Origin: Basidiobolus meristosporus CBS 931.73
Taxonomy: Eukaryota; Fungi; Basidiobolomycota
Length of the DNA: 64,000 nt
NCBI GenBank assembly: GCA_002104905.1
Contig: MCFE01000100.1
Coordinates: 1-64,000, forward strand
Direction of reading: 5' to 3'
The notes below the pieces were generated by a model. It had not been told where the DNA came from and did no database searches. It worked only from the letters and a program-made list of their open reading frames with translations. A program made the translations under genes and the position numbers. The first letter of the stretch is position 1. Every line of letters starts with the position of its first letter. Below are positions 14,735-34,158 of this stretch, in pieces.

Positions 14735-16270
14735 ATGGCCTCTCAAAACAACTTCAACGGTCAATACCCATCGTAAGTAAGCTCCTTTTAGTCCTTCCGC
14801 TAGCATCGTATTCAATGTCATTCTTTTAGCCACGATAATGACAACTGGAAGAAGACCTTGGCGCTTCCGCCAAAAGATAGCCGTCCTCAGACCGAGGTAC
14901 ATAGTAACGTAATCCCCCATTGTAGCCTCCTTTGCTCAACCTGGATAACTAGGATGTAACCGCCACCAAAGGCAACGAATTCGAAGATTATTTTTTGAAA
15001 CGCGAGCTATTAATGGGAATCTTCGAAGCCGGATTTGAACGTCCTTCCCCGATTCAAGAAGAAGCCATCCCGATCGCATTAACCGGAAGAGATGTCCTCG
15101 CTAGAGCAAAAAATGGAACCGGTAAAACCGCCGCCTTCGTCATTCCATCCTTAGAAAAAGTCAACACCAAGCTGTCCAAAATCCAGGCTCTTCTGCTCGT
15201 CCCCACTAGAGAATTGGCTCTTCAAACCTCGCAAGTGTGTAAAACTCTCGGTAAACATATGGGGGTTCAAGTTATGGTCACCACTGGTGGTACCACATTG
15301 AAAGACGATATCATGAGACTTCAAGAAAATGTACACGTGTTGGTCGGTACCCCTGGCCGTATTTTAGATTTGGCCGGCAAGGGAGTTGCTGATTTCAGCG
15401 AATGCCCCACCTTCGTCATGGATGAGGCCGACAAGCTTCTAAGTCCCGAGTTCTCGCCCGTTGTTGAGCAACTTTTAACTTTCTTCCCCAAAGACCGTCA
15501 AATCATGTTGTTCAGTGCTACTTTCCCCATTATCGTCAAGCATTTTAAGGTAACTTTGAACGACCATTGGTTGGTGTCAGAAGAACGGCTGCTCATTTCC
15601 CATTGTTGACTAGGATCGTCACATGACCAAGCCTTACGAGATCAATCTTATGGACGAACTAACCCTTCGTGGTGTTACCCAGTATTATGCTTTTGTGGAG
15701 GAGCGTCAGAAAGTCCATTGTTTAAATACTCTCTTTTCCAAACTCCAGATCAACCAATCCATCATTTTCTGTAATTCTACCAACCGTGTCGAGTTGCTTG
15801 CCAAAAAGATCACGCAGCTTGGCTACTCCTGTTTCTACAGCCATGCTAAAATGCTGCAAAGCCATCGTAATAGAGTGTTCCACGATTTCCGTAACGGCGT
15901 GTGTCGTAATCTAGTCTGCTCCGATCTGCTGACCCGTGGTATTGATATCCAGGCAGTGAATGTTGTCATCAACTTCGACTTCCCCAAGAACGCCGAGACC
16001 TATCTTCATCGTATTGGACGTAGTGGCAGATTTGGTCATCTTGGTTTGGCTATCAATCTAATCACCTATGAAGATCGTTTCAATCTGTATAAGATTGAAC
16101 AGGAGCTCGGCACCGAAATCCAACCCATCCCTCCTGTCATCGACAAACGTTTGTATGTTGCACCCAGTGCTTTAGAGGATGCTTCTGAAGCTCAGCAACA
16201 GCAGCAGCAGCAGCAGCAGAGCGCTAACAAGCAACCTCAGCAAGCCCCTCCCGTTCAGCCTCAATTTTAT

Positions 16271-16303
<33 letters not shown>

Positions 16304-16543
16304 TTCCAGCGTCAACAACTCCCTCCTCATGCGTATCAGCAACATCCCCCGCAATATCCTCAATTCCAGCAGCAACCTCCACCAATGTCGCAACAGCCCT
16401 ATGCACCTCAACCCCCAGCCCAGTTCCAGGGACAGCAGGGCAGAATGAACAACATGGGGTATTCTCAGCAAAACCAACAGCCCCCACACGATGGCAGATC
16501 AGGACAAGGAATGAACGGTGGTGGTCTGAGAGCCTTCTCTTAA
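14735..16543 (+). CDS. DHH1: DEAD-box RNA helicase Dhh1/DDX6 with Q/P-rich C-terminal tail
   Basis: Q motif [40 protein letters not shown]; multi-exon; ATG 14735 followed by a GTAAGT donor. Confidence 0.97.
16192..16303 (+). repeat. CAG/CAA trinucleotide runs encoding polyglutamine in DHH1
   Basis: Two poly-Q runs (Q9 and Q11) are visible in the translated tail. Confidence 0.9.
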
Positions 16544-17094: not shown

Positions 17095-19194
17095 CTAATC
17101 GTCGTTACCAAGACCGAGGACCTGAGCAAAGTTGAAGAAGATCTCGGTGTTGTCCATCACGCGACCGAAAAGATGAGCTCCTGGTCCACTCGCAAACACT
17201 GGTACGTCTTGTAGCGAGTGAACTCCTTGTGATTCACTAACGGGCAAGTTGCCAGTACGGTGAAGTGCGCCTTCCGCCTCATCGGGGTTGGCAATGTAGC
17301 TATCGTAGGCTGGCTTGTGTGAGTGAGTGCCCTTGTCAAGGATGGCTGGGTTCTTGACCCTGGTGGTGTTCAGCTGGAACGTCTCGTGATAGTTGGGGAA
17401 GTTGACAGTGCCAGCAGCCAGGGTGACTCGAGGGGTCCAGTTGTCAGGGAAGCCATCGCCATCCTCATCCTTGTACCCGGGCCAACCAGCAGTCTCGTAG
17501 ATTCCAATCGCCCCACGCTTCTCGATCTGAGTGCCAGACTCGTCATTGTCAGGGGCGGCATTGAAGAACTCGGTGTCAACTGTGCCATACACATCGAATC
17601 CATGTCCGTGATCAGCAGTGACCACGACAAGGGTGTCAGGGTCGTTCTTCTTGACCCACTCGAGGGCTGCCTTCACTGCATTGTCGAGTTCCAGGAGATC
17701 GGCAAGACCACGATGGAAGTCCAATGGGTGCATCATCTTGTCGATGCTGGCTGCCTCGATCATGGCGAAGAACCCGCCATTGCCACCTCGCTTCTTCAAG
17801 GTGTTCAGTGCGGTGATGGTCATATCGACCAAGTTGGGCTGGTCAAGAGCGTCACTTCCATCGCCAAGAGGCGAGCTCTTCTTGCCCTTGAGGTTGTCCT
17901 TGTAGACATTACGATCAAGCCACACATCCATGTTGCCCTTGTGGAAGATGCCCAACAACGGATCTTTGTTGTTGTGCTTCAGGAGATCGGTCTTGCTGTG
18001 GACCACGTTGTAGCCGCCTTCCTTGCGGAAGATGTCGTAGTAGTTGGCCTTGTTGAGTGACTTTCCTGGAAGGAAGTACGAGCCACCACCACCAAGCAGG
18101 ACATCAGGACGCACAGGGACCGAGAAGTTCTTCACTCCGTGGATGAAGAAGTCGGTGATCTCAGCCTTGGTTCCTCTGCGACGAGTGTGGCTGACCACGG
18201 CTGCCGGGGTGGCATCCTGCACCTCAGCAGTGGTCACGACACCGATGGCTGCCGGTCCTCCTTGCTTCTTCTCTCTGCGACGCAACAACTCGGCCAAGAG
18301 CTCTTGCTTGGGATCATCGAATGGATCATCCGAGGTATCGGCATACACCCCGAGGCCATTCACCGACGACTTGTGACCAGTGTTGTATGCTGAGGCACTG
18401 TTGGCAGAGTCGGTGATCAAGGCATCCAATCCACATGGAATGACGTGGCCCATCTCCTCCATTCTGTCCATCTGCATCCACTTCTGGTACTTTCCGTTGA
18501 CATTCTTGCGTGAGATCACTCTGGCCGCACTGATCATGGGGGTGGTCATACCATCACCAATGAAGAATATCGCATTCTTGGCAATGCGCTTCTTGAACTG
18601 GCTCTTGCGGACCTTCCACAGTGCTTCCGTCTTCTCCCCGTTGTTATACTTGACGGTGACCTTGAAGTCGCCAGAGTGACGGAAGGAAGCTCTACGCCAT
18701 ACTTTAGATACTACATTAACCGGAATGGATGCCTGCTTGTCACCAGTTTGTCCTTTCCAAAAGTGATTGGCATCAGGGAAGTATGTGAAGTTCCATGACT
18801 CCAATGGGGCAGGCTCCAAGCGGAGGTACTGAACCAGAGGGACAGGCTTGGATTCGCTTACAATCTTCCCATCATCATTCAGACGAACTTTGGCAATGGA
18901 GACCTCGAACTCGGGGTTTGGTTTACCCGCAGTTTTACCTGGGCCGGAGGCCTCATCGTGAATCTCAACTCTGACGTCAAACTTGGCGCCTAGGAGCATC
19001 TCTGCGCTAGAGTGACAATAGCGTTTAGTTAATTATGAATGCATGACTAGTCATGTAGAAAGAGTATACCTTGTAGGGGGGAAAATACAAGCCTTATCAG
19101 GACATCCAGGGTGTCTGGTAAACTGATCCGATTGGACCTGATTCAAAAGAGCGCTGAGAGTGGCCAAGAGGAGAAGGGATTTCGAGTTGAGCAT
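17095..19194 (-). CDS. Secreted alkaline phosphatase, array copy AP1
   Basis: Signal-peptide exon 19194-19070, intron 19069-19007, large exon to 17095. AP motifs FIGDGM, TDSANSASA (Ser nucleophile), DATPAA, HTRRR, EAASIDKMMH, TADHGH, GVHS. Confidence 0.96.
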
Positions 19195-19617
19195 TGTTTC
19201 CAAGAAGTACAAGTGTGAAGATCTGGAGGACTCGCGGAACTTACTTATATCTAACTTCGAAATCTCACTATACCAATCATATGAACCATTTGCGACACGC
19301 CGTCAAGATATCAAAAGTCTGTAGCCACAAATACCTTATTTTCCAAGGGAACAGGAGCAAAGTGGCCAGCAGCCGTAGAGTCAGTTGCCACCCGGTGCAA
19401 CACGAATTCTTTATATTGATGCAAGAAGCAAATGAGATGGCTGCTTTGGCACATGCTCCAAATGAGAGTATCGGATCAATTGTAGCATAAACATGAGATC
19501 TTCGACCATCTGAGTGGTTTCGAATTCAATTCGATTGGAATCTCCAGATCAATCATCTTGTATTCACCCTAAAATTGTCCGCGGCAAATCTACTCGCGTT
19601 AGATAGCATGTGCCCAC

Positions 19618-19623
19618 CACGTT
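19618..19623. promoter_or_regulatory. CACGTT, Pho4/NUC-1-type box upstream of AP1
   Basis: Motif about 425 bp upstream of the AP1 ATG. Confidence 0.5.
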
Positions 19624-19764
19624 GATGGATTATTGGTACTAGTCAATTGCTTCACTAGGTGATGGGATTTCTCAGGGGATGGATGAAATTTATTTAACAA
19701 AAAAGTAACAGCTTGACTTATTCAGCCTGTTCGGCCTCAAGGACTCGGGTGCTTCAAATGCGAT

Positions 19765-21877
19765 CTAACTGTCTTGCCCAAGTCCGAGAACTTCGGCAAA
19801 GTTGAAGAAGATCTCGGTGTTGTCCATCACGCGACCGAAAAGATGAGCTCCTGGCCCACTGGCAAATACTGGCACATCTTGTAGCGAGTGAACTCCTTGT
19901 GACTGAGTAACTGGTAAGTTACCAGTACGGTGAAGTGCGCCTTCCGCCTCATCGGGGTTGGCAATGTAGCTATCGTAGGCTGGCTTGTGTGAGTGAGTGC
20001 CCTTGTCAAGAATGGCTGGGTTCTTGACCCTGGTGGTGTTCAGCTGGAACGTCTCGTGATAGTTGGGGAAGTTGACAGTGCCAGCAGCCAGGGTGACTCG
20101 AGGGGTCCAGTTGTCAGGGAAGCCATCGCCATCCTCATCCTTGTACCCGGGCCAACCAGCAGTCTCGTAGATTCCAATGGCCCCACGCTTCTCGATCTGA
20201 GTGCCAGACTCGTCATTGTCAGGGGCGGCATTGAAGAACTCGGTGTCAACTGTGCCATACACATCGAATCCATGCCCATGATCGGCAGTGACCACGACAA
20301 GGGTGTCAGGGTCGTTCTTCTTGACCCACTCGAGGGCTGCCTTCACTGCATTGTCGAGTTCCAGGAGATCGGCAAGACCACGATGGAAGTCCAGTGGGTG
20401 CATCATCTTGTCGATGCTGGCTGCCTCGATCATGGCGAAGAACCCACCATTGCCACCTCGCTTCTTCAAGGTGTTCAGTGCGGTGATGGTCATATCGACC
20501 AAGTTGGGCTGGTCAAGAGCGTCACTTCCATCGCCAAGAGGCGAGCTCTTTTTGCCCTTGAGGTTGTCCTTGTAGACATTACGATCAAGCCACACATCCA
20601 TGTTGCCCTTGTGGAAGATGCCCAACAACGGATCTTTGTTGTTGTGCTTCAGGAGGTCGGTCTTGCTGTGGACCACGTTGTAGCCGCCTTCCTTGCGGAA
20701 GATGTCATAGTAGTTGGCCTTGTTGAGTGACTTTCCTGGAAGGAAGTACGAGCCGCCACCACCAAGCAGGACATCAGGACGCACAGGGACCGAGAAGTTC
20801 TTCACTCCGTGGATGAAGAAGTCGGTGATCTCAGCCTTAGTATCTCGAATACGAGTATGACTGACTACTGCAGCTGGTGTAGCATCCTGTACCTCAGCAG
20901 TGGTCACGACACCGATGGCTGCCGGTCCCCCTTGCTTCTTCTCTCTGCGACGCAACAACTCGGCCAAAAGCTCTTGCTTGGGATCATCAAAGAAATCAGG
21001 AGATGAATCGCCATATACACCAAGTCCACTGACAGATGACTTGTGACCAGTGTTGTATGCTGAGGCACTGTTGGCAGAGTCGGTGATCAAGGCATCCAAT
21101 CCACATGGAATGACGTGGCCCATCTCCTCCATTCTGTCCATCTGCATCCACTTCTGGTACTTTCCGTTGACATTCTTGCGAGAGATCACTCTGGCCGCAC
21201 TGATCATGGGGGTGGTCATACCATCACCAATGAAGAAGATTACGTTCTTTGCGATGCGCTTCTTGAACCGATTCTTGCGGACCTTCCACAGTGCCTCGGT
21301 TTTTTCCCCATTGTTGTAGTTGACGGTGACCTTGAAGTCACCGGAGTGACGGAAGGAAGCTCTACGCCATACTTTGGATACCACATTCACTGGGGTGGCA
21401 GCTGCAGGGTCACCACTCTTACCCTGCCCCTTCCAAAAGTGAGCAGCATCCTGGAAATAGGTAAAATTCCACGACTCAAGGGGTACAGGATCCAATCGGA
21501 GGTAAGTCTCAAGTGGGACTGGCTTGGACTCCCGGACTATTTCGCCATCGTCATTCAGACGAACCTTCGAAATGGTGACTTCAAAATTGGGGTTTGGTGT
21601 GCCAGCGACTCCTCCAGGGGCTGGTGCTTCTTCGTGGACTTCTACCCTGACATCGAACTTAGCTCCTAGGAGCATATCCGCGCTGTAAAACCGACCAGCT
21701 GTGAGAAGATCCCAGTGGCAAAGGAGAAAAAATAGTAAAGGAAAAGTACCTAGTAGGAGGAAAGATACATGCTTTATCTGGGCAACCCGGCAATCTGGTG
21801 AACTGGTCCGATACGGCGGGAGTGCTCAGAAGACTGAGAGCACTAATCAAAGCCAAAGCTTTATAGGCAGCAGACAT
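19765..21877 (-). CDS. Secreted alkaline phosphatase, array copy AP2 (most divergent)
   Basis: ATG 21877 (MSAAYKALALISALSLLSTPAVSDQF), one intron, same catalytic motifs; variant segments GDSSPDFF and HTRIRDT. Confidence 0.96.
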
Positions 21878-22507
21878 TACAATATTCACTTCTGTGATGA
21901 GATGTTTGAACATTCACAACCGTCAGGTCCTATTTATATGGAGGATGCATCTCTCCACGGAGCTGTGCATGGCCCTACTTGGTATGGTGTGAGGCTTCAA
22001 CGAATCTTTTTTGGTTAGATCACCAAAATATACTTTCGATATGGCCATTTTTTGAACTTGGTGCGTTATATTGAAACCTTAATCAACCGCCAATCGCAGA
22101 AGCTGGTGGGACGAGAATGAAGGATACTGTTTTGAACCACCGATAGCCGTAGCAGCATGTAAATCGTACAGACAAATGATAGGCTCAAATCTCACCACAA
22201 AATTTTGGGAGTTACATCTACCAACTTGGAAGTAAGGTAGAGTATTTCTATTGTAGGGTTTGGAAGTATCACCCGTGAGGTCGAATGTTATCGCAAAGAA
22301 CGTTCGGTGGACGTTGAAGAGTAATGGGCCATCACAATGATCATACGGGACCCTGAATCAACGCCATTGTTGTTTGGGTAGACATCCGTCATGGTCAGAT
22401 TTTGCCTGTGTGACCGAGAGAACATTTCGAAGTTCTTTGAAAATCGGGTGGGAAATTGATCCCAGCACAATAGTTGGATTTCATGTGCTATCGTGAAGAT
22501 CAACCGG

Positions 22508-22513
22508 CACGTT
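22508..22513. promoter_or_regulatory. GCACGTTG, Pho4/NUC-1-type box upstream of AP2
   Basis: Motif about 630 bp upstream of the AP2 ATG. Confidence 0.5.
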
Positions 22514-22716
22514 GGGTACCTAAAATTTTTCTCAAGTTACCGATCACAAAGCCAATCATCTACAAATGGTCCAATGTCTCAGTAACATGGCATCCTCGCC
22601 AATGGATTATTTATTAGCTCTGTATAATTCATGAAATCAAGTATATAGATTCCTCTAGACTGTTTTCCTGCTCTGACTTCCCTCAATTACTCAATATTAT
22701 AAACCGGTTCACTTAG

Positions 22717-24885
22717 TTACTGATCTTGTCCAAGGCCAAGGGCTTCTGCAAAGTTGAAGAAGATCTCGGTGTTGTCCATCACGCGACCGAAAAGATGGGC
22801 TCCTGGTCCACTCGCAAACACTGGTACGTCTTGTAGCGAGTGAACTCCTTGTGATTCACTAACGGGCAAGTTGCCAGTACGGTGAAGTGCGCCTTCCGCC
22901 TCATCGGGGTTGGCAATGTAGCTATCATAGGCTGGCTTGTGTGAGTGAGTACCCTTGTCAAGGATGGCTGGGTTCTTGACCCTGGTGGTGTTCAGCTGGA
23001 ACGTCTCGTGATAGTTGGGGAAGTTGACAGTGCCAGCAGCCAGGGTGACTCGAGGGGTCCAGTTGTCAGGGAAGCCGTCACCATCCTCATCCTTGTACCC
23101 AGGCCAACCAGCAGTCTCGTAGATCCCAATGGCCCCACGCTTCTCGATCTGAGTGCCAGACTCGTCATTGTCAGGGGCGGCATTGAAGAACTCGGTGTCA
23201 ACTGTGCCATACACATCGAATCCATGTCCGTGATCAGCAGTGACCACGACAAGGGTGTCAGGGTCGTTCTTCTTGACCCACTCGAGGGCTGCCTTCACTG
23301 CATTGTCGAGTTCCAGGAGATCAGCAAGACCACGATGGAAGTCCAATGGGTGCATCATCTTGTCGATGCTGGCTGCCTCGATCATGGCGAAGAACCCACC
23401 ATTGCCACCTCGTTTCTTCAAGGTGTTCAGTGCGGTGATGGTCATATCGACCAAGTTGGGCTGGTCAAGAGCGTCACTTCCATCGCCAAGAGGCGAGCTC
23501 TTCTTGCCCTTGAGGTTGTCCTTGTAGACATTACGATCAAGCCACACATCCATGTTGCCCTTGTGGAAGATGCCCAACAACGGATCTTTGTTGTTGTGCT
23601 TCAGGAGGTCGGTCTTGCTGTGGACCACGTTGTAGCCGCCTTCCTTGCGGAAGATGTCATAGTAGTTGGTCTTGTTGAGTGACTTTCCTGGAAGGAAGTA
23701 CGAGCCACCACCACCAAGCAGGACATCAGGACGCACAGGGACCGAGAAGTTCTTCACTCCGTGGATGAAGAAGTCGGTGATCTCAGCCTTGGTTCCTCTG
23801 CGACGAGTGTGGCTGACCACGGCTGCCGGGGTGGCATCCTGCACCTCAGCAGTGGTCACGACACCGATGGCTGCCGGTCCTCCTTGCTTCTTCTCTCTGC
23901 GACGCAACAACTCGGCCAAGAGCTCTTGCTTGGGATCATCGAATGGATCATCCGAGGTATCGGCATACACCCCGAGGCCATTCACCGACGACTTGTGACC
24001 AGTGTTGTATGCTGAGGCACTGTTGGCAGAGTCGGTGATCAAGGCATCCAATCCACATGGAATGACGTGGCCCATCTCCTCCATTCTGTCCATCTGCATC
24101 CACTTCTGGTACTTTCCGTTGACATTCTTGCGGGAGATCACTCTGGCCGCACTGATCATGGGGGTGGTCATACCATCACCAATGAAGAATATCGCATTCT
24201 TGGCAATGCGCTTCTTGAACTGGCTCTTGCGGACCTTCCACAGTGCCTCCGTCTTCTCCCCGTTGTTATACTTGACGGTGACCTTGAAGTCGCCAGAGTG
24301 ACGGAAGGAAGCTCTGCGCCACACCTTGGACACCACATTCACCGGGGTAGAGGCCGAGCTGACCCCTCCGTTGTGAGTGTGGTCCGCGTTCTCCACTGCC
24401 CCTCCTTGGCCCTTCCAGAAGTGTGCGGCATCCTGGAAGTATGTGAAGTTCCACGACTCCAGAGGGGCTGGCTCCAGTCGGAGATACTGCTCTAACGGGA
24501 CTGGCTTGGACTCCTGAATGACCTTGCCATCATCATTCAGATGAACCTTGGCAATGCTGATCTCGAAGTTGGGGTTAGGCTTGCCAGCAACTCCTCCGGG
24601 GGCTTTGGCCTCCTCGTGGATCTCCACTCTGACGTCGAACTTGGCACCCAAGAGCATTTCAGCACTGTATCAGAGTGAGTGGCGGTTAGTGTATCTACTC
24701 CACATACCGGTAGAAACTGGTGTCTTGGCAACCAGTAATGGATTGAATGGTACATACCTTGTAGGGGGAAGGATACAAGCCTTATCGGGACAACCTGGGA
24801 ATCGGGTGAACTGATCGGCAACGACACTAGTGCTCAAGGCACTCAGAGTAGCCAACAAGGCAACCGCTTTCAATCCTGTGAGCAT
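22717..24885 (-). CDS. Secreted alkaline phosphatase, array copy AP3
   Basis: ATG 24885 (MLTGLKAVALLATLSALSTSVVADQF), one intron, 646-aa second-exon ORF with all AP motifs. Confidence 0.96.
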
Positions 24886-25144
24886 GTCGTTGAGGAGCTA
24901 GTGTTTATTCGCGAGGAATATTGCTTCTGCCCACTTCGAGTGCGGGTTCTTATACCGACATCAAGTTCAAGCCAACGAACGACAGTGCGACTTACCAGCA
25001 TGTGGTTCTACAAGAAATATATCTGTTGAACATTCGCAACAGCCCTGATCCAGTGAAGAGTCACTTCAACTCGAGATATCGGATGCCTAATAAGGTTATG
25101 GGTGATATACACCACCTGTATCACCATGCTTGACTCATGGTTCA

Positions 25145-25203
25145 CACGTTGACCAACCCAATTTCGATGCGAATCAATCTTTTATCACTGCATCCTTCAC
25201 GTT
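25145..25203. promoter_or_regulatory. Two CACGTT boxes upstream of AP3
   Basis: 25145-25150 and 25198-25203. Confidence 0.55.
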
Positions 25204-25395
25204 CCCACTTCTGGGATTGAGATCACTTAGATCTCATGATAGTGACTTACGTGTCCAACACACAGTACCTGGAAATGCGGTTGATTCGCCGCGGATACTG
25301 ACATAGCAGTGAATTGTAACCATGGAGATTGTGAAGTTCAACAAGTATTGGTTCAAGTGTGATTCCACAATCAAGTTCTCATCTTAACAGTGTGA

Positions 25396-27741
25396 TTACG
25401 ATTGTTCAAATATAGGCTTTTGATTGATCATTAATAACTCATTGTATAATTCGTGACTATACTTGACTTCAGTCCCAAAATTGGTATGATTAACTTGGAT
25501 ATATCGTTTCAGACAACAAACAATAGGGTCGATTCTCCTAGTCGAGGGCAGCAGGTAAACTAATCTATAGCGCTTATTGTCTTGTCCGAGGCCGAGAGCT
25601 TCGGCAAAGTTGAAGAAGATCTCGGTGTTGTCCATCACGCGACCGAAAAGATGAGCTCCTGGCCCACTCGCAAACACTGGCACATCTTGTAGCGAGTGAA
25701 CTCCCTGTGATTCACTAACGGGCAAGTTGCCAGTACGGTGAAGTGCGCCTTCCGCCTCATCGGGGTTGGCAATGTAGCTATCGTAGGCTGGCTTGTGTGA
25801 GTGAGTGCCCTTGTCAAGGATGGCTGGGTTCTTGACCCTGGTGGTGTTCAGCTGGAACGTCTCGTGATAGTTGGGGAAGTTGACAGTGCCAGCAGCCAGG
25901 GTGACTCGAGGGGTCCAGTTGTCAGGGAAGCCGTCACCATCCTCATCCTTGTACCCGGGCCAACCAGCAGTCTCGTAGATCCCAATGGCCCCACGCTTCT
26001 CGATCTGAGTGCCAGACTCGTCATTGTCAGGGGCGGCATTGAAGAACTCGGTGTCAACTGTGCCATACACATCGAATCCATGTCCGTGATCAGCAGTGAC
26101 CACGACAAGGGTGTCAGGGTCGTTCTTCTTGACCCACTCGAGGGCTGCCTTCACTGCATTGTCGAGTTCCAGGAGATCAGCAAGACCACGATGGAAGTCC
26201 AATGGGTGCATCATCTTGTCGATGCTAGCTGCCTCGATCATGGCGAAGAACCCGCCATTGCCACCTCGCTTCTTCAAGGTGTTCAGTGCGGTGATGGTCA
26301 TATCGACCAAGTTGGGCTGGTCAAGAGCGTCACTTCCATCGCCAAGAGGCGAGCTCTTCTTGCCCTTGAGGTTGTCCTTGTAGACATTACGATCAAGCCA
26401 CACATCCATGTTGCCCTTGTGGAAGATGCCCAACAATGGATCTTTGTTGTTGTGCTTCAGGAGATCGGTCTTGCTGTGGACCACGTTGTAGCCGCCTTCC
26501 TTGCGGAAGATATCATAGTAGTTGGTCTTGTTGAGTGACTTTCCTGGAAGGAAGTACGAGCCACCACCACCAAGCAGGACATCAGGACGCACAGGGACCG
26601 AGAAGTTCTTCACTCCGTGGATGAAGAAGTCGGTGATCTCAGCCTTGGTTCCTCTGCGACGAGTGTGGCTGACCACGGCTGCCGGGGTGGCATCCTGCAC
26701 CTCAGCAGTGGTCACGACACCGATCGCTGCCGGTCCTCCTTGCTTCTTCTCTCTGCGACGCAACAACTCGGCCAAGAGCTCTTGCTTGGGATCATCGAAT
26801 GGATCATCCGAGGTATCGGCATACACCCCGAGGCCATTCACCGACGACTTGTGACCAGTGTTGTAAGCTGAGGCACTGTTGGCAGAGTCGGTGATCAAGG
26901 CATCCAATCCGCATGGAATGACGTGGCCCATCTCCTCCATTCTGTCCATCTGCATCCACTTCTGGTACTTTCCGTTGACATTCTTGCGTGAGATCACTCT
27001 GGCCGCACTGATCATGGGGGTGGTCATACCATCACCAATGAAGAATATCGCATTCTTGGCAATGCGCTTCTTGAACTGGCTCTTGCGGACCTTCCACAGT
27101 GCCTCCGTCTTCTCCCCGTTGTTATACTTGACGGTGACCTTGAAGTCGCCAGAGTGACGGAAAGAAGCTCTGCGCCACACCTTGGACACCACATTCACCG
27201 GGGTAGAGGCCGAGCTGACCCCTCCGTTGTGAGTGTGGTCCGCGTTCTCCACTGCCCCTCCTTGGCCCTTCCAGAAGTGTGCGGCATCCTGGAAGTATGT
27301 GAAGTTCCACGACTCCAGAGGGGCTGGCTCCAGTCGGAGATACTGCTCTAACGGGACTGGCTTGGACTCCTGAATGACCTTGCCATCATCATTCAGATGA
27401 ACCTTGGCAATGCTGATCTCGAAGTTGGGGTTAGGCTTGCCAGCAACTCCTCCGGGGGCTTTGGCCTCCTCGTGGATCTCCACTCTGACATCGAACTTGG
27501 CACCCAAGAGCATTTCAGCACTGTATCAGAGTGAGTGGCGGTTAGTGTATCTACTCCACATACCGGTAGAAACTGGTGTCTTGGCAACCAGTAATGGATT
27601 GAATGGTACATACCTTGTAGGGGGAAGGATACAAGCCTTATCGGGACAACCTGGGAATCGGGTGAACTGATCGGCAACGACACTAGTGCTCAAGGCACTC
27701 AGAGTAGCCAACAAGGCAACCGCTTTCAATCCTGTGAGCAT
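25396..27741 (-). CDS. Secreted alkaline phosphatase, array copy AP4, with 59-aa C-terminal read-through extension
   Basis: ATG 27741; nearly identical to AP3. The normal stop position is out of frame (TAA at 25576-25574), so the ORF runs to 25396. Confidence 0.94.
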
Positions 27742-28045
27742 GTCGTTGAGGAGCTAGTTGTTTATTCGCGAGGAATATTGCTACTGCCCACTTCGAGTGC
27801 GGGTTCTTATACCGACATCAAGTTCAAGCCAACGAACGACAGTGCGACTTACCAGCATGTGGTTCTACAAGAAATATATCTGTTGAACATTCGCAACAGC
27901 CCTGATCCAGTGAAGAGTCACTTCAACTCGAGATATCGGATGCCTAATAAGGTTATGGGTGATATACACCACCTGTATCACCAAGTTCCTTTCGTGGTCA
28001 CACTTGATCAACCCAGCGATGCCGAATCACATCACGGCATCCCTT

Positions 28046-28051
28046 CACGTT
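28046..28051. promoter_or_regulatory. CACGTT box upstream of AP4
   Basis: Sits in the block CCTTCACGTTCCC..TTCTGGGATTG, conserved with the AP3 promoter although the surrounding sequence has diverged. Confidence 0.55.
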
Positions 28052-28347
28052 CCCGTTTCTGGGATTGTGGCTCCCACTTGATTGATGATAGGTGTTACGT
28101 GGTCCAGCTCACATCCTGAATGAATGTAGCCGACTGACATCAGAATTGTTGACTGTCATGTGTGGGAATTGACATTTTGGTCGCCACTTGGAATTTCTCC
28201 ATGGATGTGACCTGTGGCCAAAAGTATTGGTGCTTTTGATGTGTTTGAAATGTTTATTCGTGGATTAATTAGTGATCACCGACTTTTGGGGTATGATGGT
28301 TGCTATTATGCTTAATGAAAATTGGGTTCGATTCTATCAAATGCTAT

Positions 28348-30516
28348 CTATTCGTCCTGCCCGAGACCGAGAGCTTCGGCAAAGTTGAAGAAGATCTCGG
28401 TGTTGTCCATCACGCGACCGAAAAGATGAGCTCCTGGTCCACTCGCAAACACTGGCACATCTTGTAGCGAGTGAACTCCCTGTGATTCACTAACGGGCAA
28501 GTTGCCAGTACGGTGAAGTGCGCCTTCCGCCTCATCGGGGTTGGCAATGTAGCTATCGTAGGCTGGCTTGTGTGAGTGAGTGCCCTTGTCAAGGATGGCT
28601 GGGTTCTTGACCCTGGTGGTGTTCAGCTGGAACGTCTCGTGATAGTTGGGGAAGTTGACAGTGCCAGCAGCCAGGGTGACTCGAGGGGTCCAGTTGTCAG
28701 GGAAGCCGTCACCATCCTCATCCTTGTACCCGGGCCAACCAGCAGTCTCGTAGATTCCAATGGCCCCACGCTTCTCGATCTGAGTGCCAGACTCGTCATT
28801 GTCAGGGGCGGCATTGAAGAACTCGGTGTCAACTGTGCCATACACATCGAATCCATGCCCATGATCAGCAGTGACCACGACAAGGGTGTCAGGGTCGTTC
28901 TTCTTGACCCACTCGAGGGCTGCCTTCACTGCATTGTCGAGTTCCAGGAGATCGGCAAGACCACGATGGAAGTCCAATGGGTGCATCATCTTGTCGATGC
29001 TGGCTGCCTCGATCATGGCGAAGAACCCACCATTGCCACCTCGCTTCTTCAAGGTGTTCAGTGCAGTGATGGTCATATCGACCAAGTTGGGCTGGTCAAG
29101 AGCGTCACTTCCATCGCCAAGAGGCGAGCTCTTCTTGCCCTTGAGGTTGTCCTTGTAGACATTACGATCAAGCCACACATCCATGTTGCCCTTGTGGAAG
29201 ATGCCCAACAACGGATCTTTGTTGTTGTGCTTCAGGAGATCGGTCTTGCTGTGGACCACGTTGTAGCCGCCTTCCTTGCGGAAGATGTCATAGTAGTTGG
29301 CCTTGTTGAGTGACTTTCCTGGAAGGAAGTACGAGCCACCACCACCAAGCAGGACATCAGGACGCACAGGGACCGAGAAGTTCTTCACTCCGTGGATGAA
29401 GAAGTCGGTGATCTCAGCCTTGGTTCCTCTGCGACGAGTGTGGCTGACCACGGCTGCCGGGGTGGCATCCTGCACCTCAGCAGTGGTCACGACACCGATC
29501 GCTGCCGGTCCTCCTTGCTTCTTCTCTCTGCGACGCAACAACTCGGCCAAGAGCTCTTGCTTGGGATCATCAAATGGATCATCCGAGGTATCGGCATACA
29601 CCCCGAGGCCATTCACCGACGACTTGTGACCAGTGTTGTAAGCTGAGGCACTGTTGGCAGAGTCGGTGATCAAGGCATCCAATCCACATGGAATGACGTG
29701 GCCCATCTCCTCCATTCTGTCCATCTGCATCCACTTCTGGTACTTTCCGTTGACATTCTTGCGTGAGATCACTCTGGCCGCACTGATCATGGGGGTGGTC
29801 ATACCATCACCAATGAAGAATATCGCATTCTTTGCGATGCGCTTCTTGAACTGGCTCTTGCGGACCTTCCACAGTGCCTCCGTCTTCTCCCCGTTGTTAT
29901 ACTTGACGGTGACCTTGAAGTCGCCAGAGTGACGGAAGGAAGCTCTGCGCCACACCTTGGACACCACATTCACCGGGGTAGAGGCCGAGCTGACCCCTCC
30001 GTTGTGAGTGTGGTCCGCGTTCTCCACTGCCCCTCCTTGGCCCTTCCAGAAGTGTGCGGCATCCTGGAAGTATGTGAAGTTCCACGACTCCAGAGGGGCT
30101 GGCTCCAGTCGGAGATACTGCTCTAACGGGACTGGCTTGGACTCCTGAATGACCTTGCCATCATCATTCAGATGAACCTTGGCAATGCTGATCTCGAAGT
30201 TGGGGTTAGGCTTGCCAGCAACTCCTCCGGGGGCTTTGGCCTCCTCGTGGATCTCCACTCTGACATCGAACTTGGCGCCCAAGAGCATTTCAGCACTGTA
30301 TCAGAGTGAGTGGCGGTTAGTGTATCTACTCCACACACCGGTAGAAACTGGTGTCTTGGGAACCAGTAATGGATTGAATGGTACATACCTTGTGGGTGGA
30401 AGGATACAAGCCTTATCGGGACAACCTGGGAATCGGGTGAACTGATCGGCGACCGCATTCATGCTGAGAGCGCTCAAAGCGGCCACCAAGCTCAATGCCC
30501 TAGATTTGAAGTACAT
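28348..30516 (-). CDS. Secreted alkaline phosphatase, array copy AP5
   Basis: ATG 30516 with a distinct signal peptide (MYFKSRALSLVAALSALSMNAVADQF); mature region and intron nearly identical to AP3 and AP4. Confidence 0.96.
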
Positions 30517-31298: not shown

Positions 31299-33640
31299 TC
31301 ACTCTCGCTTTCGCTCTCGACGAATTGCTTCTTGACTGGCCTCGGCTATTTTATCCCAGTCGGCCATGAATACGCCAACTATGGATTGTCCGAGTGTCAA
31401 TATAACGAGCGCCGCGCATAAGGCTAACCAGAGTCCCTTTAGTCCCATATGGAAGGTAAATGCCAGAACTCCACCAAGCGGCACGGCAATGACGTAATAT
31501 CCCATCAGGTTGAAAAATGCTCCGATAGACGGGCGGCCTTGGCCACGAAGAATACCACCGGCGATGCTACCAACAACATCGCACATCTAAATTCAAGGGG
31601 GTGGAGTTAGAGAGGCGTCGTGATCCGGAATCACATGGTTGGCTATCTTACCTGGCAAGCGGCAAGGATTGGTGTGATCACAGCGACCAGCTTGATAACA
31701 TCGCTGTCGTTAATAAATATGTAGGCCCATTGATTTCTGAAGACGATAAGCAAGACGGCGTTGTATAATCCCATCACTAGACTTATATATGTGGCAGCGT
31801 ATGCAGCACGTTTGGCATGCAGCGGTAAATTTCCCCCAAGATAGTGGCCAACGCGAATACTAGCCGCAACTCCCCAACCTAGAAACGAAATGGATGATCG
31901 ACGGTGGGTAAGTGACTCGCATTATATACAGTAGTGCGATTACAAGCAACTTACCGAGGGTAATTTGGTATAAGCATGCATCAGTGGTAACAAGTACTGA
32001 CTGTGCAGCGAGGGCAGTAATTCCGAAGAATGTAGTCGCTAAGGTAACCAACTCCCAAGCACAAAACTCGGCGGAAATAACTATCACACTGGGGACGGCT
32101 AGATAATTGATGGATCCAAATGAGCATGGGATCTAAGGCAATTTAAAGTGCCGCCGAAAACACCACTTTACCTAATCGAATAAACGTATCCCACTCCTCT
32201 AGACATTTATGAGACCATCCGCCCCAAGCCTCTCTGCCATTAATGTACCGGACATACCCGACGGTTAACAAAAATACAAGGGTGTAGGAGATGGAGTAGG
32301 CAATGGGGGCACCAGCAAACCCGATGGCAGTAGGCGGCCAAAGTACTAAAAGATAGGTGAGCACAAATGTGAATGGAGTTACAATGCCAAGAATAATCGT
32401 GCTAGCATTCATAATGCCTAGAGAGAGGAAAACCCATGTAAGTAAATGAACCTCCTAGAGATTCACTGAGCAAGTCGGAATTACCTTGTGCTTGCAAGAA
32501 ACGTTTGATGCTCTCGAATAGCAGGACTGGCAACATACCAGGCCAGAGCCATTTCAGATAAACCGCGGCGAGCTTGGCCAAATAGGGTTCCTGGAGCATG
32601 ACGTTGATGAAGATCCATTCAGAGTTGAACCAAACGAACCCGAGGACTCCCCACAGAGCCACCATAAACAGAATGGCGCGTTGTAAATGTACACCAACAA
32701 CAGTCACGTCGTGAGCACCAGTAAATGCCTGACTGCAAAGTGTGTCCAATGCAGTAGCCAGGCCAATTCCCGGACTTAGTGCAGTTAGCGTGGAGAACAT
32801 ACTGGCCAACGTGGCAGCGCCGAGCTCTAAAGAAATATTTGTTAACAAGTTGAACTTGGCGAATGACTCGGCAAAATATCTGGAAATTTACCCTCAGCGC
32901 CCATTCTTCCAAGGACCATTACCCCGGCCAAATTAATAACGTACTGTAGCAAATATGAGCCTACCAGAGGCATTGACATTTTAACCAATTCCACTGCCTC
33001 TTCTTTGATGGTAAGCAATGGTTGCTCTACCGAGCCATGTGACGATTCGAGGCTGGAATCCGTGGAGTGTATGCTAGCTACCCGCGTTGTACGAGAAGGT
33101 ATTGTGGGTGATTTCAGGTCCAGGGCTTTTGTGGGAACCGGTTTGGCGGGTAGAGTCAATAGTGTGTCATTTTCTTTCTGGCCAGCATTTGGCAAACGTT
33201 CGGGTTCTTCTTCAACTTTGTCTAAGGTAGCACCACCCGTGCTACCGTATCCTTTTACTTTATTAGGTTTTGTGACTGTTTCTTCGGAACTCTCGCCGAG
33301 CTGTTGATTTGTCAAGACTGGTGTCTTTTTCTTCGCTTTATTCGTATCCTCCGAGGCCAGGTGCTTGTCATGTTTGGATCGCTTTGGGATGGAATTGTCA
33401 ACTACGACTGAATCTCGACGAACTATCGGTGGAACCGCTTTTGGGTTGCTTCTTAGAGGTCGGGCAGCGGCTCTAGAAGTGGTGGTTCCCAAAGGAGGAG
33501 CCGGTGGAGGAGCTGGAGAGGATTCTCTTCTCTTCAGTGATGATTAGCTGGCCGTTTTCACCGCGTCTAGATAGTCTCCTGTTGAAATCAGGTCTTATCG
33601 GAGGAGGATTGCTGGGTTTTGAGCTGTCAGGTGTTGTCAT
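31299..33640 (-). CDS. MATE-family multidrug/toxic compound exporter; both termini uncertain
   Basis: ELVKMSMPLVGSYLLQY, GLATALDTLCSQAFTG, HLQRAILF, ESIKRFLQAQG, SAEFCAWE, VGHYLGG, GGILRGQGRP, NLMGYYVIAVP, GLKGLW; many introns. Apparent frame breaks near 33545 and 31315. Confidence 0.9.
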
Positions 33641-34102
33641 GTTTCACCTATGCAAAGCTAATGTTGAATAACCGATACTACGACTAGAAGGCTAGAGGGA
33701 ACAGAAATAGTAGAGACACTTTTGAACCTGAATCAACAGGATATTACAACAGATATATGAACGAGCAAAACGTGAAGACCAAGACGGGAAATCGATCCGT
33801 CATTCTTTCCACCAATGAGCAACCTCGAGCGGATGAGAAATCATGAACCATTGAAAATTTTCTATTATGTTCGATATCAAACATGAATAAAATGCGCGGA
33901 TTCTAGATGGGCGGAGAAAGCAATTTCTTTCGATAGGAAATATTAATCTCATCCATGGAAATAAACAATTCGTGTTTGTGACCAAAGGTGTAACATTGTC
34001 GGTAATGGTGACGACATCCGATACTGGTTGTCCGACTCAGCTGTGATGGTTCTTGCCCCTAGGCTTTTGCCAGCCTTGCCACCACGCCCCTAGTACCTTA
34101 TA

Positions 34103-34158
34103 TATACACATCTGTATACACACCTATATACACACCTAATATACACACCTATATACAC
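34103..34158 (+). repeat. 12-bp tandem repeat (TATACACACCTA) x about 4.5
   Basis: Directly visible in the divergent MATE / 34578 intergenic region. Confidence 0.85.

What the first reader, a model, noticed from the sequence alone, without database searches (positions are those of the whole stretch)
17095..30516. Five-gene tandem array of secreted alkaline phosphatases with homogenised catalytic cores
Seen: five head-to-tail genes on the minus strand over 13.4 kb, each with a signal-peptide exon, one intron at the same position and a large exon. The catalytic ~1.5 kb is almost identical at the DNA level, including synonymous sites, while the signal peptides, an N-terminal loop, the last residues and most spacers differ. 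Known: AP-superfamily motifs (GDGM, D-S-A nucleophile, IDKxxH, ADHGH) are intact in all copies, with the E. coli-type D153/K328 configuration. Inference: a dosage-amplified phosphate-scavenging locus kept uniform by gene conversion or unequal crossing-over, while targeting and regulation diversify.
Basis: partly seen in the sequence, partly recalled or inferred. Interest (0 to 1): 0.75.

Follow-up and report, generated by a model that had tools for sequence, protein, structure and literature searches.

The report
Five tandem phosphatase genes homogenised by conversion
The fungus Basidiobolus meristosporus carries five neighbouring genes for a secreted alkaline phosphatase, and the copies keep overwriting one another's enzyme-coding core while their starts, ends and spacers stay old and different. 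This is a clean but textbook case of gene conversion.

Summary
Five head-to-tail minus-strand genes (17095-30516) each have a signal-peptide exon, one phase-2 intron at the same codon and a ~1.9 kb second exon. Each encodes a PhoA-like_N domain plus an E. coli-type alkaline phosphatase with all catalytic residues intact.

The window is Basidiobolus meristosporus CBS 931.73. Four of the five genes are already annotated publicly. Copy 4 has lost its stop codon and seems unannotated.

Synonymous divergence is 0.84-1.57 in the first 450 nt of exon 2. It is 0.044-0.064 in the 1.45 kb core for copies 1, 3, 4 and 5. Copy 2 keeps three unconverted islands that are 32-37% diverged.

The core holds eight conflicting site patterns and needs at least eight exchanges. 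The homogenised tract ends 27 nt before the stop in every copy, and its 5' edge differs by copy. All spacers are unique apart from ~380 bp shared upstream of copies 3 and 4. This favours non-crossover gene conversion among old paralogues over recent duplication, unequal crossing-over or an assembly artefact.

Dosage and phosphate scavenging remain inference. "Diversified targeting" is not supported.

Earlier notes of this scan report similar conversion cases elsewhere in this genome. The kind is known; this is a new member.

The parts
17095..19194 (-). Copy 1 (public ORX99240, 678 aa). Exon 1 is 19194-19070, the intron 19069-19007 and exon 2 19006-17095.
19765..21913 (-). Copy 2. Exon 1 runs from ATG 21877 (more likely than 21913, given a TATA box 61 nt upstream of 21877) to 21750. 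The intron is 21749-21683 and exon 2 is 21682-19765. The public model (P0121, 636 aa) lacks exon 1.
22717..24885 (-). Copy 3 (public ORX99242, 691 aa). Exon 1 is 24885-24758, the intron 24757-24665 and exon 2 24664-22717.
25396..27741 (-). Copy 4. Exon 1 is 27741-27614, the intron 27613-27521 and exon 2 27520-25396. The expected stop position (25573-25575) reads AAG, so the frame runs 59 codons further to 25396. The protein is otherwise 645/645 identical to copy 3. It appears to be absent from the public annotation.
28348..30516 (-). Copy 5 (public ORX99243, 691 aa). Exon 1 is 30516-30389, the intron 30388-30296 and exon 2 30295-28348.
17126..18567 (-). Homogenised core as it lies in copy 1; against copies 3-5 the tract extends to about 18693. 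The same core lies at 19796-21237 (copy 2), 22748-24189 (copy 3), 25604-27045 (copy 4) and 28379-29820 (copy 5).
20839..21037 (-). Two unconverted islands inside the core of copy 2: 20989-21037 (18/49 nt differ) and 20839-20890 (16/52 nt differ). A third lies at 19903-19921 (6/19 nt differ).
24886..25264 (-). Upstream region of copy 3, which matches the upstream region of copy 4 (27742-28113) at 89% overall and 97% over the proximal 240 nt. This is the only spacer similarity in the array.
14995..16543 (+). Flanking DEAD-box helicase (DEAD plus Helicase_C domains), convergent with copy 1. The DHH1 identity itself was not tested.
31299..33492 (-). Flanking MatE-family transporter exons, upstream of copy 5.

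Best explanation
Five old tandem paralogues in Basidiobolus meristosporus encode a secreted, PhoA-type (E. coli-like, D153/K328) alkaline phosphatase with an N-terminal PhoA-like_N beta-sandwich domain. Repeated short-tract, non-crossover gene conversion between the copies keeps about 1.45 kb of the catalytic exon nearly identical.

Conversion stops where homology has already been lost. At the 3' end that point is common to all copies, 27 nt before the stop. At the 5' end it differs by copy: inside the N-terminal domain for copy 1, at the start of the AP domain for copy 2, at the signal-peptide cleavage site for copy 5, and about 380 bp into the promoter for the pair of copies 3 and 4.

Shown here: the gene structures, the intact catalytic residues, the contrast in dS, the mosaic sites and the unique spacers. 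Inferred: that the enzymes are secreted phosphomonoesterases used to release phosphate, that five copies raise dosage, and that four unrelated promoters give different regulation.
For: Identity and function.
- Pfam PF00245 matches at E~1e-65 in all five copies.
- Sequence alignment to E. coli AP structures shows D51, S102, D153, T155, R166, E322, D327, K328, H331, D369, H370 and H412 conserved, and these are invariant across the copies.
- The AlphaFold model has pLDDT 88.7, and its top Foldseek hits are all alkaline phosphatases at E~1e-28.
- The N-terminal part is PF26732 PhoA-like_N.
- Signal peptides with small residues at -3/-1 precede a nearly invariant Cys pair.

Conversion.
- dS is 0.84-1.57 in the first 450 nt of exon 2. 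It is 0.044-0.064 in the core for copies 1, 3, 4 and 5.
- Fisher tests of N-terminal versus core difference rates give p from 1e-22 to 1e-40.
- Introns and flanks of copies 1 and 2 cannot be aligned with the others.
- The 21 informative core sites fall into 8 different splits. 109 of 210 site pairs fail the four-gamete test, and Rm = 8.
- Copy 2 keeps three islands that are 32-37% diverged, embedded in sequence that is 98% identical.
- The last 9 codons and all 3' flanks differ even among copies 3, 4 and 5.

Assembly. The genome was sequenced with PacBio (PMC7466969), and four of the copies exist as distinct public proteins.
Against: - No sister-strain or sister-species sequence could be reached, so 'paralogues closer than orthologues' is untested.
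- The PHI-like test restricted to the core is not significant (p = 0.25). The signal there comes from the number of incompatible splits, not from their spacing.
- GC3 shows no clear GC-biased conversion signature.
- There is no expression, secretion or activity evidence.
- Promoter CACGTK sites are only about 4-fold enriched.
Confidence: 0.85

Rival explanations
1. The five copies arose by very recent tandem duplication (unequal crossing-over). Their similarity is simply youth, and no conversion is involved.
For: Copies 3 and 4 share about 2.4 kb, including 380 bp of promoter. The five copies are monophyletic in the family tree.
Against: - Within the same genes, the first 343-468 nt of exon 2, the introns, the last 27 nt and all 3' flanks are saturated or cannot be aligned (dS 0.84-1.57), while the core has dS ~0.05.
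- Duplicated units would carry their spacers with them, and the spacers are unique.
- The core sites conflict with any single tree.
Confidence: 0.05
2. Strong purifying selection, including selection on codon usage or mRNA structure, keeps the catalytic core identical without any sequence exchange.
For: The core is the conserved catalytic domain. Across the family the N-terminal domain evolves about 1.6 times faster at the protein level.
Against: - Synonymous sites are homogenised 15- to 30-fold.
- Copy 2's islands inside the core carry many synonymous differences, so those sites are free to vary.
- Between Basidiobolus paralogues the N-terminal/core divergence ratio is about 95-fold, against about 1.6-fold between lineages.
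Confidence: 0.03
3. The array is an assembly or polishing artefact: copies were inflated, or the core was artificially homogenised by mis-assigned reads.
For: Near-identical 1.5 kb repeats are hard to assemble. Copy 4's single-base stop loss could be a consensus error.
Against: - Each copy has unique flanks, 3' ends and private or shared variants in the core.
- The spacing is irregular: 2670, 2952, 2856 and 2775 nt.
- The assembly is from PacBio long reads.
- Shared variants form structured patterns, not noise.
Confidence: 0.05

Closest known systems
E. coli alkaline phosphatase PhoA (PDB 1ALK, 1KH4, 3TG0) and Alkaline phosphatase H (PDB chain 36py_C)
   Same: Same fold and the full catalytic set: the Ser nucleophile in D-S-A, both Zn sites, the Mg site with D153/T155/E322, K328 and R166.
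   Different: - About 25% identity.
- An extra N-terminal PhoA-like_N beta-sandwich of about 150 aa.
- An insertion of about 115 aa between DHGH and the last His ligand.
- A eukaryotic signal peptide and an intron.
Fungal PhoA-like_N + Alk_phosphatase family (for example Calcarisporiella thermophila VTP21DRAFT_11092, and the Conidiobolus coronatus NRRL 28638 paralogues P0010, P0025, P0048 and P0068)
   Same: Same two-domain architecture and length, at 53-56% identity. C. coronatus also has four paralogues, each listed with a longest contig of 73571 nt. Two of them are 100% identical over their last ~360 aa but only 47-93% identical before that, which looks like the same kind of mosaic.
   Different: The Basidiobolus array has five copies and homogenisation across all of them. 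The DNA of the Conidiobolus locus could not be fetched, so that mosaic is seen at the protein level only.
Concerted evolution of tandem secreted phosphatase genes in yeast (S. cerevisiae PHO5/PHO3 and PHO11/PHO12). This is recalled from my own knowledge and was not tested here.
   Same: Multi-copy secreted phosphatase genes with similar coding regions and different promoters or regulation.
   Different: A different enzyme family (histidine acid phosphatases), fewer copies per array, and no domain-bounded tract has been described.
Other gene-conversion cases noted by this scan in the same genome (s1-206117, s1-239744, s1-218894)
   Same: Tandem paralogues of B. meristosporus with homogenised segments next to old, diverged segments.
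   Different: Different gene families (a chitin-binding secreted protein, and sensor kinases). These are unchecked AI notes and I did not re-test them.

Membership tests
Alkaline phosphatase (Pfam PF00245, PhoA type) | Profile match above the gathering threshold | tested here: met
   219.6-221.6 bits against a cut-off of 24.4, in all five copies.
Alkaline phosphatase (Pfam PF00245, PhoA type) | Ser nucleophile plus Zn1/Zn2/Mg ligands and the phosphate-binding Arg (E. coli D51, S102, D153, T155, R166, E322, D327, H331, D369, H370, H412) | tested here: met
   HMMER alignment to 1kh4 and 36py. The residues are invariant among the five copies and mostly invariant across 57 family members.
Alkaline phosphatase (Pfam PF00245, PhoA type) | E. 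coli-type D153/K328 rather than the mammalian H153/H328 | tested here: met
   QDATPA and SIDKMMH align to E. coli QDATPA and SIDKQNH.
Alkaline phosphatase (Pfam PF00245, PhoA type) | AP fold | tested here: met
   AF2 model with pLDDT 88.7 and pTM 0.90. The Foldseek hits listed (ranks 1-49) are all alkaline phosphatases, E 1e-28 to 1e-23.
Alkaline phosphatase (Pfam PF00245, PhoA type) | Phosphomonoesterase activity at alkaline pH | not testable with these tools
   This needs an enzyme assay.
PhoA-like_N domain (PF26732) | Profile match in the N-terminal ~150 aa | tested here: met
   Precomputed Pfam domains of P0001. The Atlas gives PhoA-like_N clusters at TM 0.73-0.74. The local Pfam copy lacks this model.
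Concerted evolution by interlocus gene conversion | Segment-specific loss of synonymous divergence between paralogues, with sharp breakpoints | tested here: met
   dS 0.84-1.57 against 0.044-0.064. Breakpoints lie at alignment columns 343, 469 and 1910.
Concerted evolution by interlocus gene conversion | Mosaic, phylogenetically incompatible sites | tested here: met
   8 splits among 21 informative sites, 109/210 incompatible pairs, Rm = 8. The PHI-like test gives p = 0.0014 for the whole exon and 0.25 for the core alone.
Concerted evolution by interlocus gene conversion | Paralogues within a genome more alike than positional orthologues between species | not testable with these tools
Concerted evolution by interlocus gene conversion | GC-biased signature in the converted segment | tested here: inconclusive
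   Core GC3 is 0.63-0.67. N-terminal GC3 is 0.55-0.59 in copies 1 and 2 and 0.74-0.75 in copies 3-5.
Secreted protein | N-terminal signal peptide, with no membrane anchor | tested here: met
   The n/h/c regions and small -3/-1 residues were read by eye, there is a conserved Cys pair, and the C-terminus is not hydrophobic. No signal-peptide predictor was available.
Phosphate-starvation (Pho4/NUC-1) regulon | CACGTG/CACGTT sites in the promoters and induction on Pi starvation | tested here: inconclusive
   7 CACGTK sites in 3.3 kb of the five upstream regions, against about 1 per 1.8 kb window-wide. Induction was not testable. The NUC-1 motif and AP induction in Neurospora are from PMC12506109.

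The most novel reading that the evidence does not exclude
The array could be a modular isoform system. Conversion would keep one optimised catalytic chassis, while selection holds the PhoA-like_N domains, copy 2's two islands (one spanning the R166 segment) and four unrelated promoters apart. That would give isoforms with different substrate docking, wall association or induction. The same core-only homogenisation seems to recur independently in the Conidiobolus coronatus cluster, which would make it a property of this gene family rather than of one genome.
Probability: 0.15. Interest if true: 0.5.

Novelty: new member of a known kind. Interest (0 to 1): 0.3.

Why it matters
It gives a well-resolved natural example of conversion tracts bounded by loss of homology. 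The example has nested 5' edges, a common 3' edge 27 nt before the stop, and unconverted islands of about 50 nt.

It concerns a nutrient-scavenging enzyme family in an early-diverging fungus that lives in animal guts and can infect people.

It also corrects the public annotation. One copy is apparently missing and one lacks its signal-peptide exon, which matters for secretome counts. Beyond that it is ordinary biology.

Tried and rejected
- **GC-biased conversion.** The GC3 comparison gave no consistent signal.
- **GENECONV-like longest-run test.** It is significant for every pair not involving copy 2. It is not significant for copy-2 pairs, because copy-2 private sites dominate the polymorphic sites. 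Fisher tests and island mapping were used instead.
- **PHI-like test on the core alone.** Not significant, p = 0.25.
- **A '400 bp piece downstream of copies 4 and 5'.** This appeared in the unit alignment but was an artefact of overlapping flanks. It is the shared promoter of copies 3 and 4.
- **Shared promoter k-mers.** No 8-mer is common to all upstream regions.
- **Metagenome scan.** An exact 26-mer from the core found nothing in metagenome contigs.
- **Literature.** Searches found no paper on Basidiobolus alkaline phosphatase genes or on a fungal AP array under conversion.
- **Spliced models.** Searches used exon 2 by reference and the spliced proteins that the database returned.
Full report
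**Observation**

The region 17095-30516 holds five large minus-strand ORFs of 634, 636, 646, 705 and 646 codons. All match Pfam Alk_phosphatase at E~1e-65 over residues ~140-640.

Upstream of each ORF lies a short exon. It encodes a signal peptide and the conserved mature start DQFTRxPGCPDKACIxPPT. It ends in AG|GTA and is followed by an intron of 63, 67, 93, 93 or 93 nt, and then by an acceptor 7 nt before the ORF's first ATG. The junction reads ..PPT-S-AE-MLLGAKF.. in every copy, so the intron is in phase 2 at one and the same position.

The public spliced proteins of copies 1, 3 and 5 use this same junction. Searches used exon 2 by reference or the database's own proteins.

**Identity**

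Exon 2 of copy 3 is 100% identical to a protein of Basidiobolus meristosporus CBS 931.73, found on a 172,446-nt contig. The next relatives are only 56% identical: Calcarisporiella, Mortierellomycota, Conidiobolus and other fungi.

The 90% cluster holds four proteins:
- ORX99240 is copy 1.
- A 636-aa model without exon 1 is copy 2.
- ORX99242 is copy 3.
- ORX99243 is copy 5.

Copy 4 lies between ORX99242 and ORX99243 and has no member in the cluster. It is therefore most likely unannotated, which is an inference from the consecutive accession numbers.

Copy 4 reads AAG where the others have TAG or TAA (25573-25575). Its frame continues for 59 codons to 25396. Otherwise its protein equals copy 3 at 645 of 645 residues.

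**Protein**

Alignment to E. coli AP structures shows these motifs:
- GDGM (D51)
- DSA (S102)
- QDATPA (D153, T155)
- the third Arg of RRR (R166; copy 2 has RIR and keeps it)
- EAASIDKMMH (E322, D327, K328, H331)
- TADHGH (D369, H370)
- GVHS (H412)

All are identical in the five copies.

An AlphaFold model built on 57 family members has pLDDT 88.7. Its Foldseek hits are alkaline phosphatases at E~1e-28.

Residues ~36-190 form a beta-sandwich, catalogued as PF26732 PhoA-like_N.

The signal peptides have a basic n-region, a hydrophobic core and small residues at -3/-1 (VQS|D, AVS|D, VVA|D, AVA|D). A nearly invariant Cys pair follows them. No C-terminal hydrophobic tail is present. The proteins are therefore most likely secreted soluble enzymes. 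This is an inference, since no signal-peptide predictor was available.

**Pattern of similarity**

A sliding-window alignment of the five units shows 97-100% identity over ~1.5 kb in all pairs, apart from copy 2's three divergent islands. Identity is 70-80% in the first 350-470 nt of exon 2 between copy 1, copy 2 and copies 3-5. The flanks cannot be aligned.

Nei-Gojobori dS values are as follows:
- First 450 nt: 0.84-1.57, with dN 0.10-0.14, so that part is under purifying selection.
- Core, among copies 1, 3, 4 and 5: 0.044-0.064.
- Core, pairs involving copy 2: 0.16-0.20.

The difference rates of the two segments differ with Fisher p from 1e-22 to 1e-40.

Copy 2's excess sits in three islands: 49 nt with 18 differences, 52 nt with 16, and 19 nt with 6. 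These lie in sequence that is otherwise 98% identical. Many of the island differences are synonymous. This shows that the core's synonymous sites are free to vary, and that copy 2's core was once as diverged as its N-terminus.

The 21 parsimony-informative sites of the core fall into eight different bipartitions. A tree of five sequences can hold only two. 109 of 210 site pairs fail the four-gamete test, and at least eight exchanges are needed.

**Edges of the homogenised tract**

The 3' edge is common to all copies. Identity ends 27 nt before the stop. The last nine codons differ at synonymous sites even among copies 3, 4 and 5, and no 3' flank resembles another.

The 5' edge is nested:
- About window 18693 for copy 1.
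- About 21237 for copy 2.
- At the signal-peptide cleavage site in exon 1 for copy 5 against copies 3 and 4.
- About 380 bp into the promoter for the pair of copies 3 and 4 (89% overall, 97% over the proximal 240 nt).

All five are therefore old paralogues at their ends. Conversion runs until homology fails.

Apart from the shared promoter of copies 3 and 4, all spacers are unique. Homogenisation by unequal crossing-over would spread spacers with the genes, so it is not the main process. Non-crossover conversion is the better reading.

**Rivals**

- Recent duplication fails on the breakpoints inside exons and on the conflicting sites.
- Purifying selection fails on synonymous sites and on copy 2's islands. 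Across lineages the N-terminal domain is only ~1.6 times more divergent than the core at the protein level, against ~95 times between copies 1 and 3.
- An assembly artefact is unlikely. Each copy has its own flanks, ends and variants, the spacing is irregular, and the genome is a PacBio assembly (PMC7466969).

**Context**

The five copies are monophyletic in a family tree, so the expansion is specific to the lineage.

Conidiobolus coronatus has four paralogues, each listed with a longest contig of 73,571 nt. Two of them are 100% identical over their last ~360 residues but only 47-93% identical before that. A similar core-only homogenisation may thus recur there.

The DHH1 identity itself was not tested.

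**Function and regulation (inferred)**

Fungi secrete alkaline phosphatases on phosphate starvation. In Neurospora the AP gene pho-2 rises 368-fold, and NUC-1 binds GCACGTG (PMC12506109). Whether pho-2 belongs to this family was not tested.

The five upstream regions hold seven CACGTK sites in 3.3 kb. The window-wide density is about one per 1.8 kb, and the window as a whole shows no excess over shuffles. This is a weak hint only.

Dosage and divergent regulation remain hypotheses. 'Diversified targeting' is not supported, because all copies have ordinary signal peptides and the same mature N-terminus.

**Novelty**

The genes are public and annotated as alkaline phosphatase-like. No paper on this array was found.

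Earlier notes of this scan report several other conversion cases between tandem paralogues in the same genome. I did not re-test them.

Concerted evolution of tandem arrays is a well-known process. This is a clean new member of that kind, with unusually legible tract edges. I score interest at 0.3.

Noticed in passing
window 25573-25575 (copy 4): The stop codon is replaced by AAG, so the ORF continues 59 codons to 25396. The copy seems to be missing from the public annotation, since the accession numbers jump from copy 3 (ORX99242) to copy 5 (ORX99243).
   Followed up: partly
window 21750-21913 (copy 2, exon 1): The public model of copy 2 (P0121, 636 aa) starts at the first Met of exon 2 and lacks the signal-peptide exon. 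Two in-frame ATGs exist (21913 and 21877). A TATA box 61 nt upstream of 21877 favours the second.
   Followed up: partly
proteins P0010 and P0025 of Conidiobolus coronatus NRRL 28638 (longest contig 73571 nt): The two paralogues are 100% identical over their last ~360 aa but only 47-93% identical in the first ~300 aa. This is an abrupt mosaic that suggests conversion, or a chimeric duplication, in an independent lineage.
   Followed up: partly
window 19618, 22508, 25145, 25198, 28046, 30783, 30845: Seven CACGTT/CACGTG sites (Pho4/NUC-1-type E-box) lie in the five upstream regions. The six CACGTT sites all have the same orientation (30845 is the palindromic CACGTG). The density is about 4 times that of the window.
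   Followed up: partly
window 20839-20890 (copy 2): One unconverted island of copy 2 covers the segment aligned to E. coli R166 (HTRIRD against HTRRRG in the other copies). Whether selection keeps it apart is unknown.
   Followed up: no
window 34101-34158: A short tandem repeat with unit TATATACACACC, 4.8 copies.
   Followed up: no
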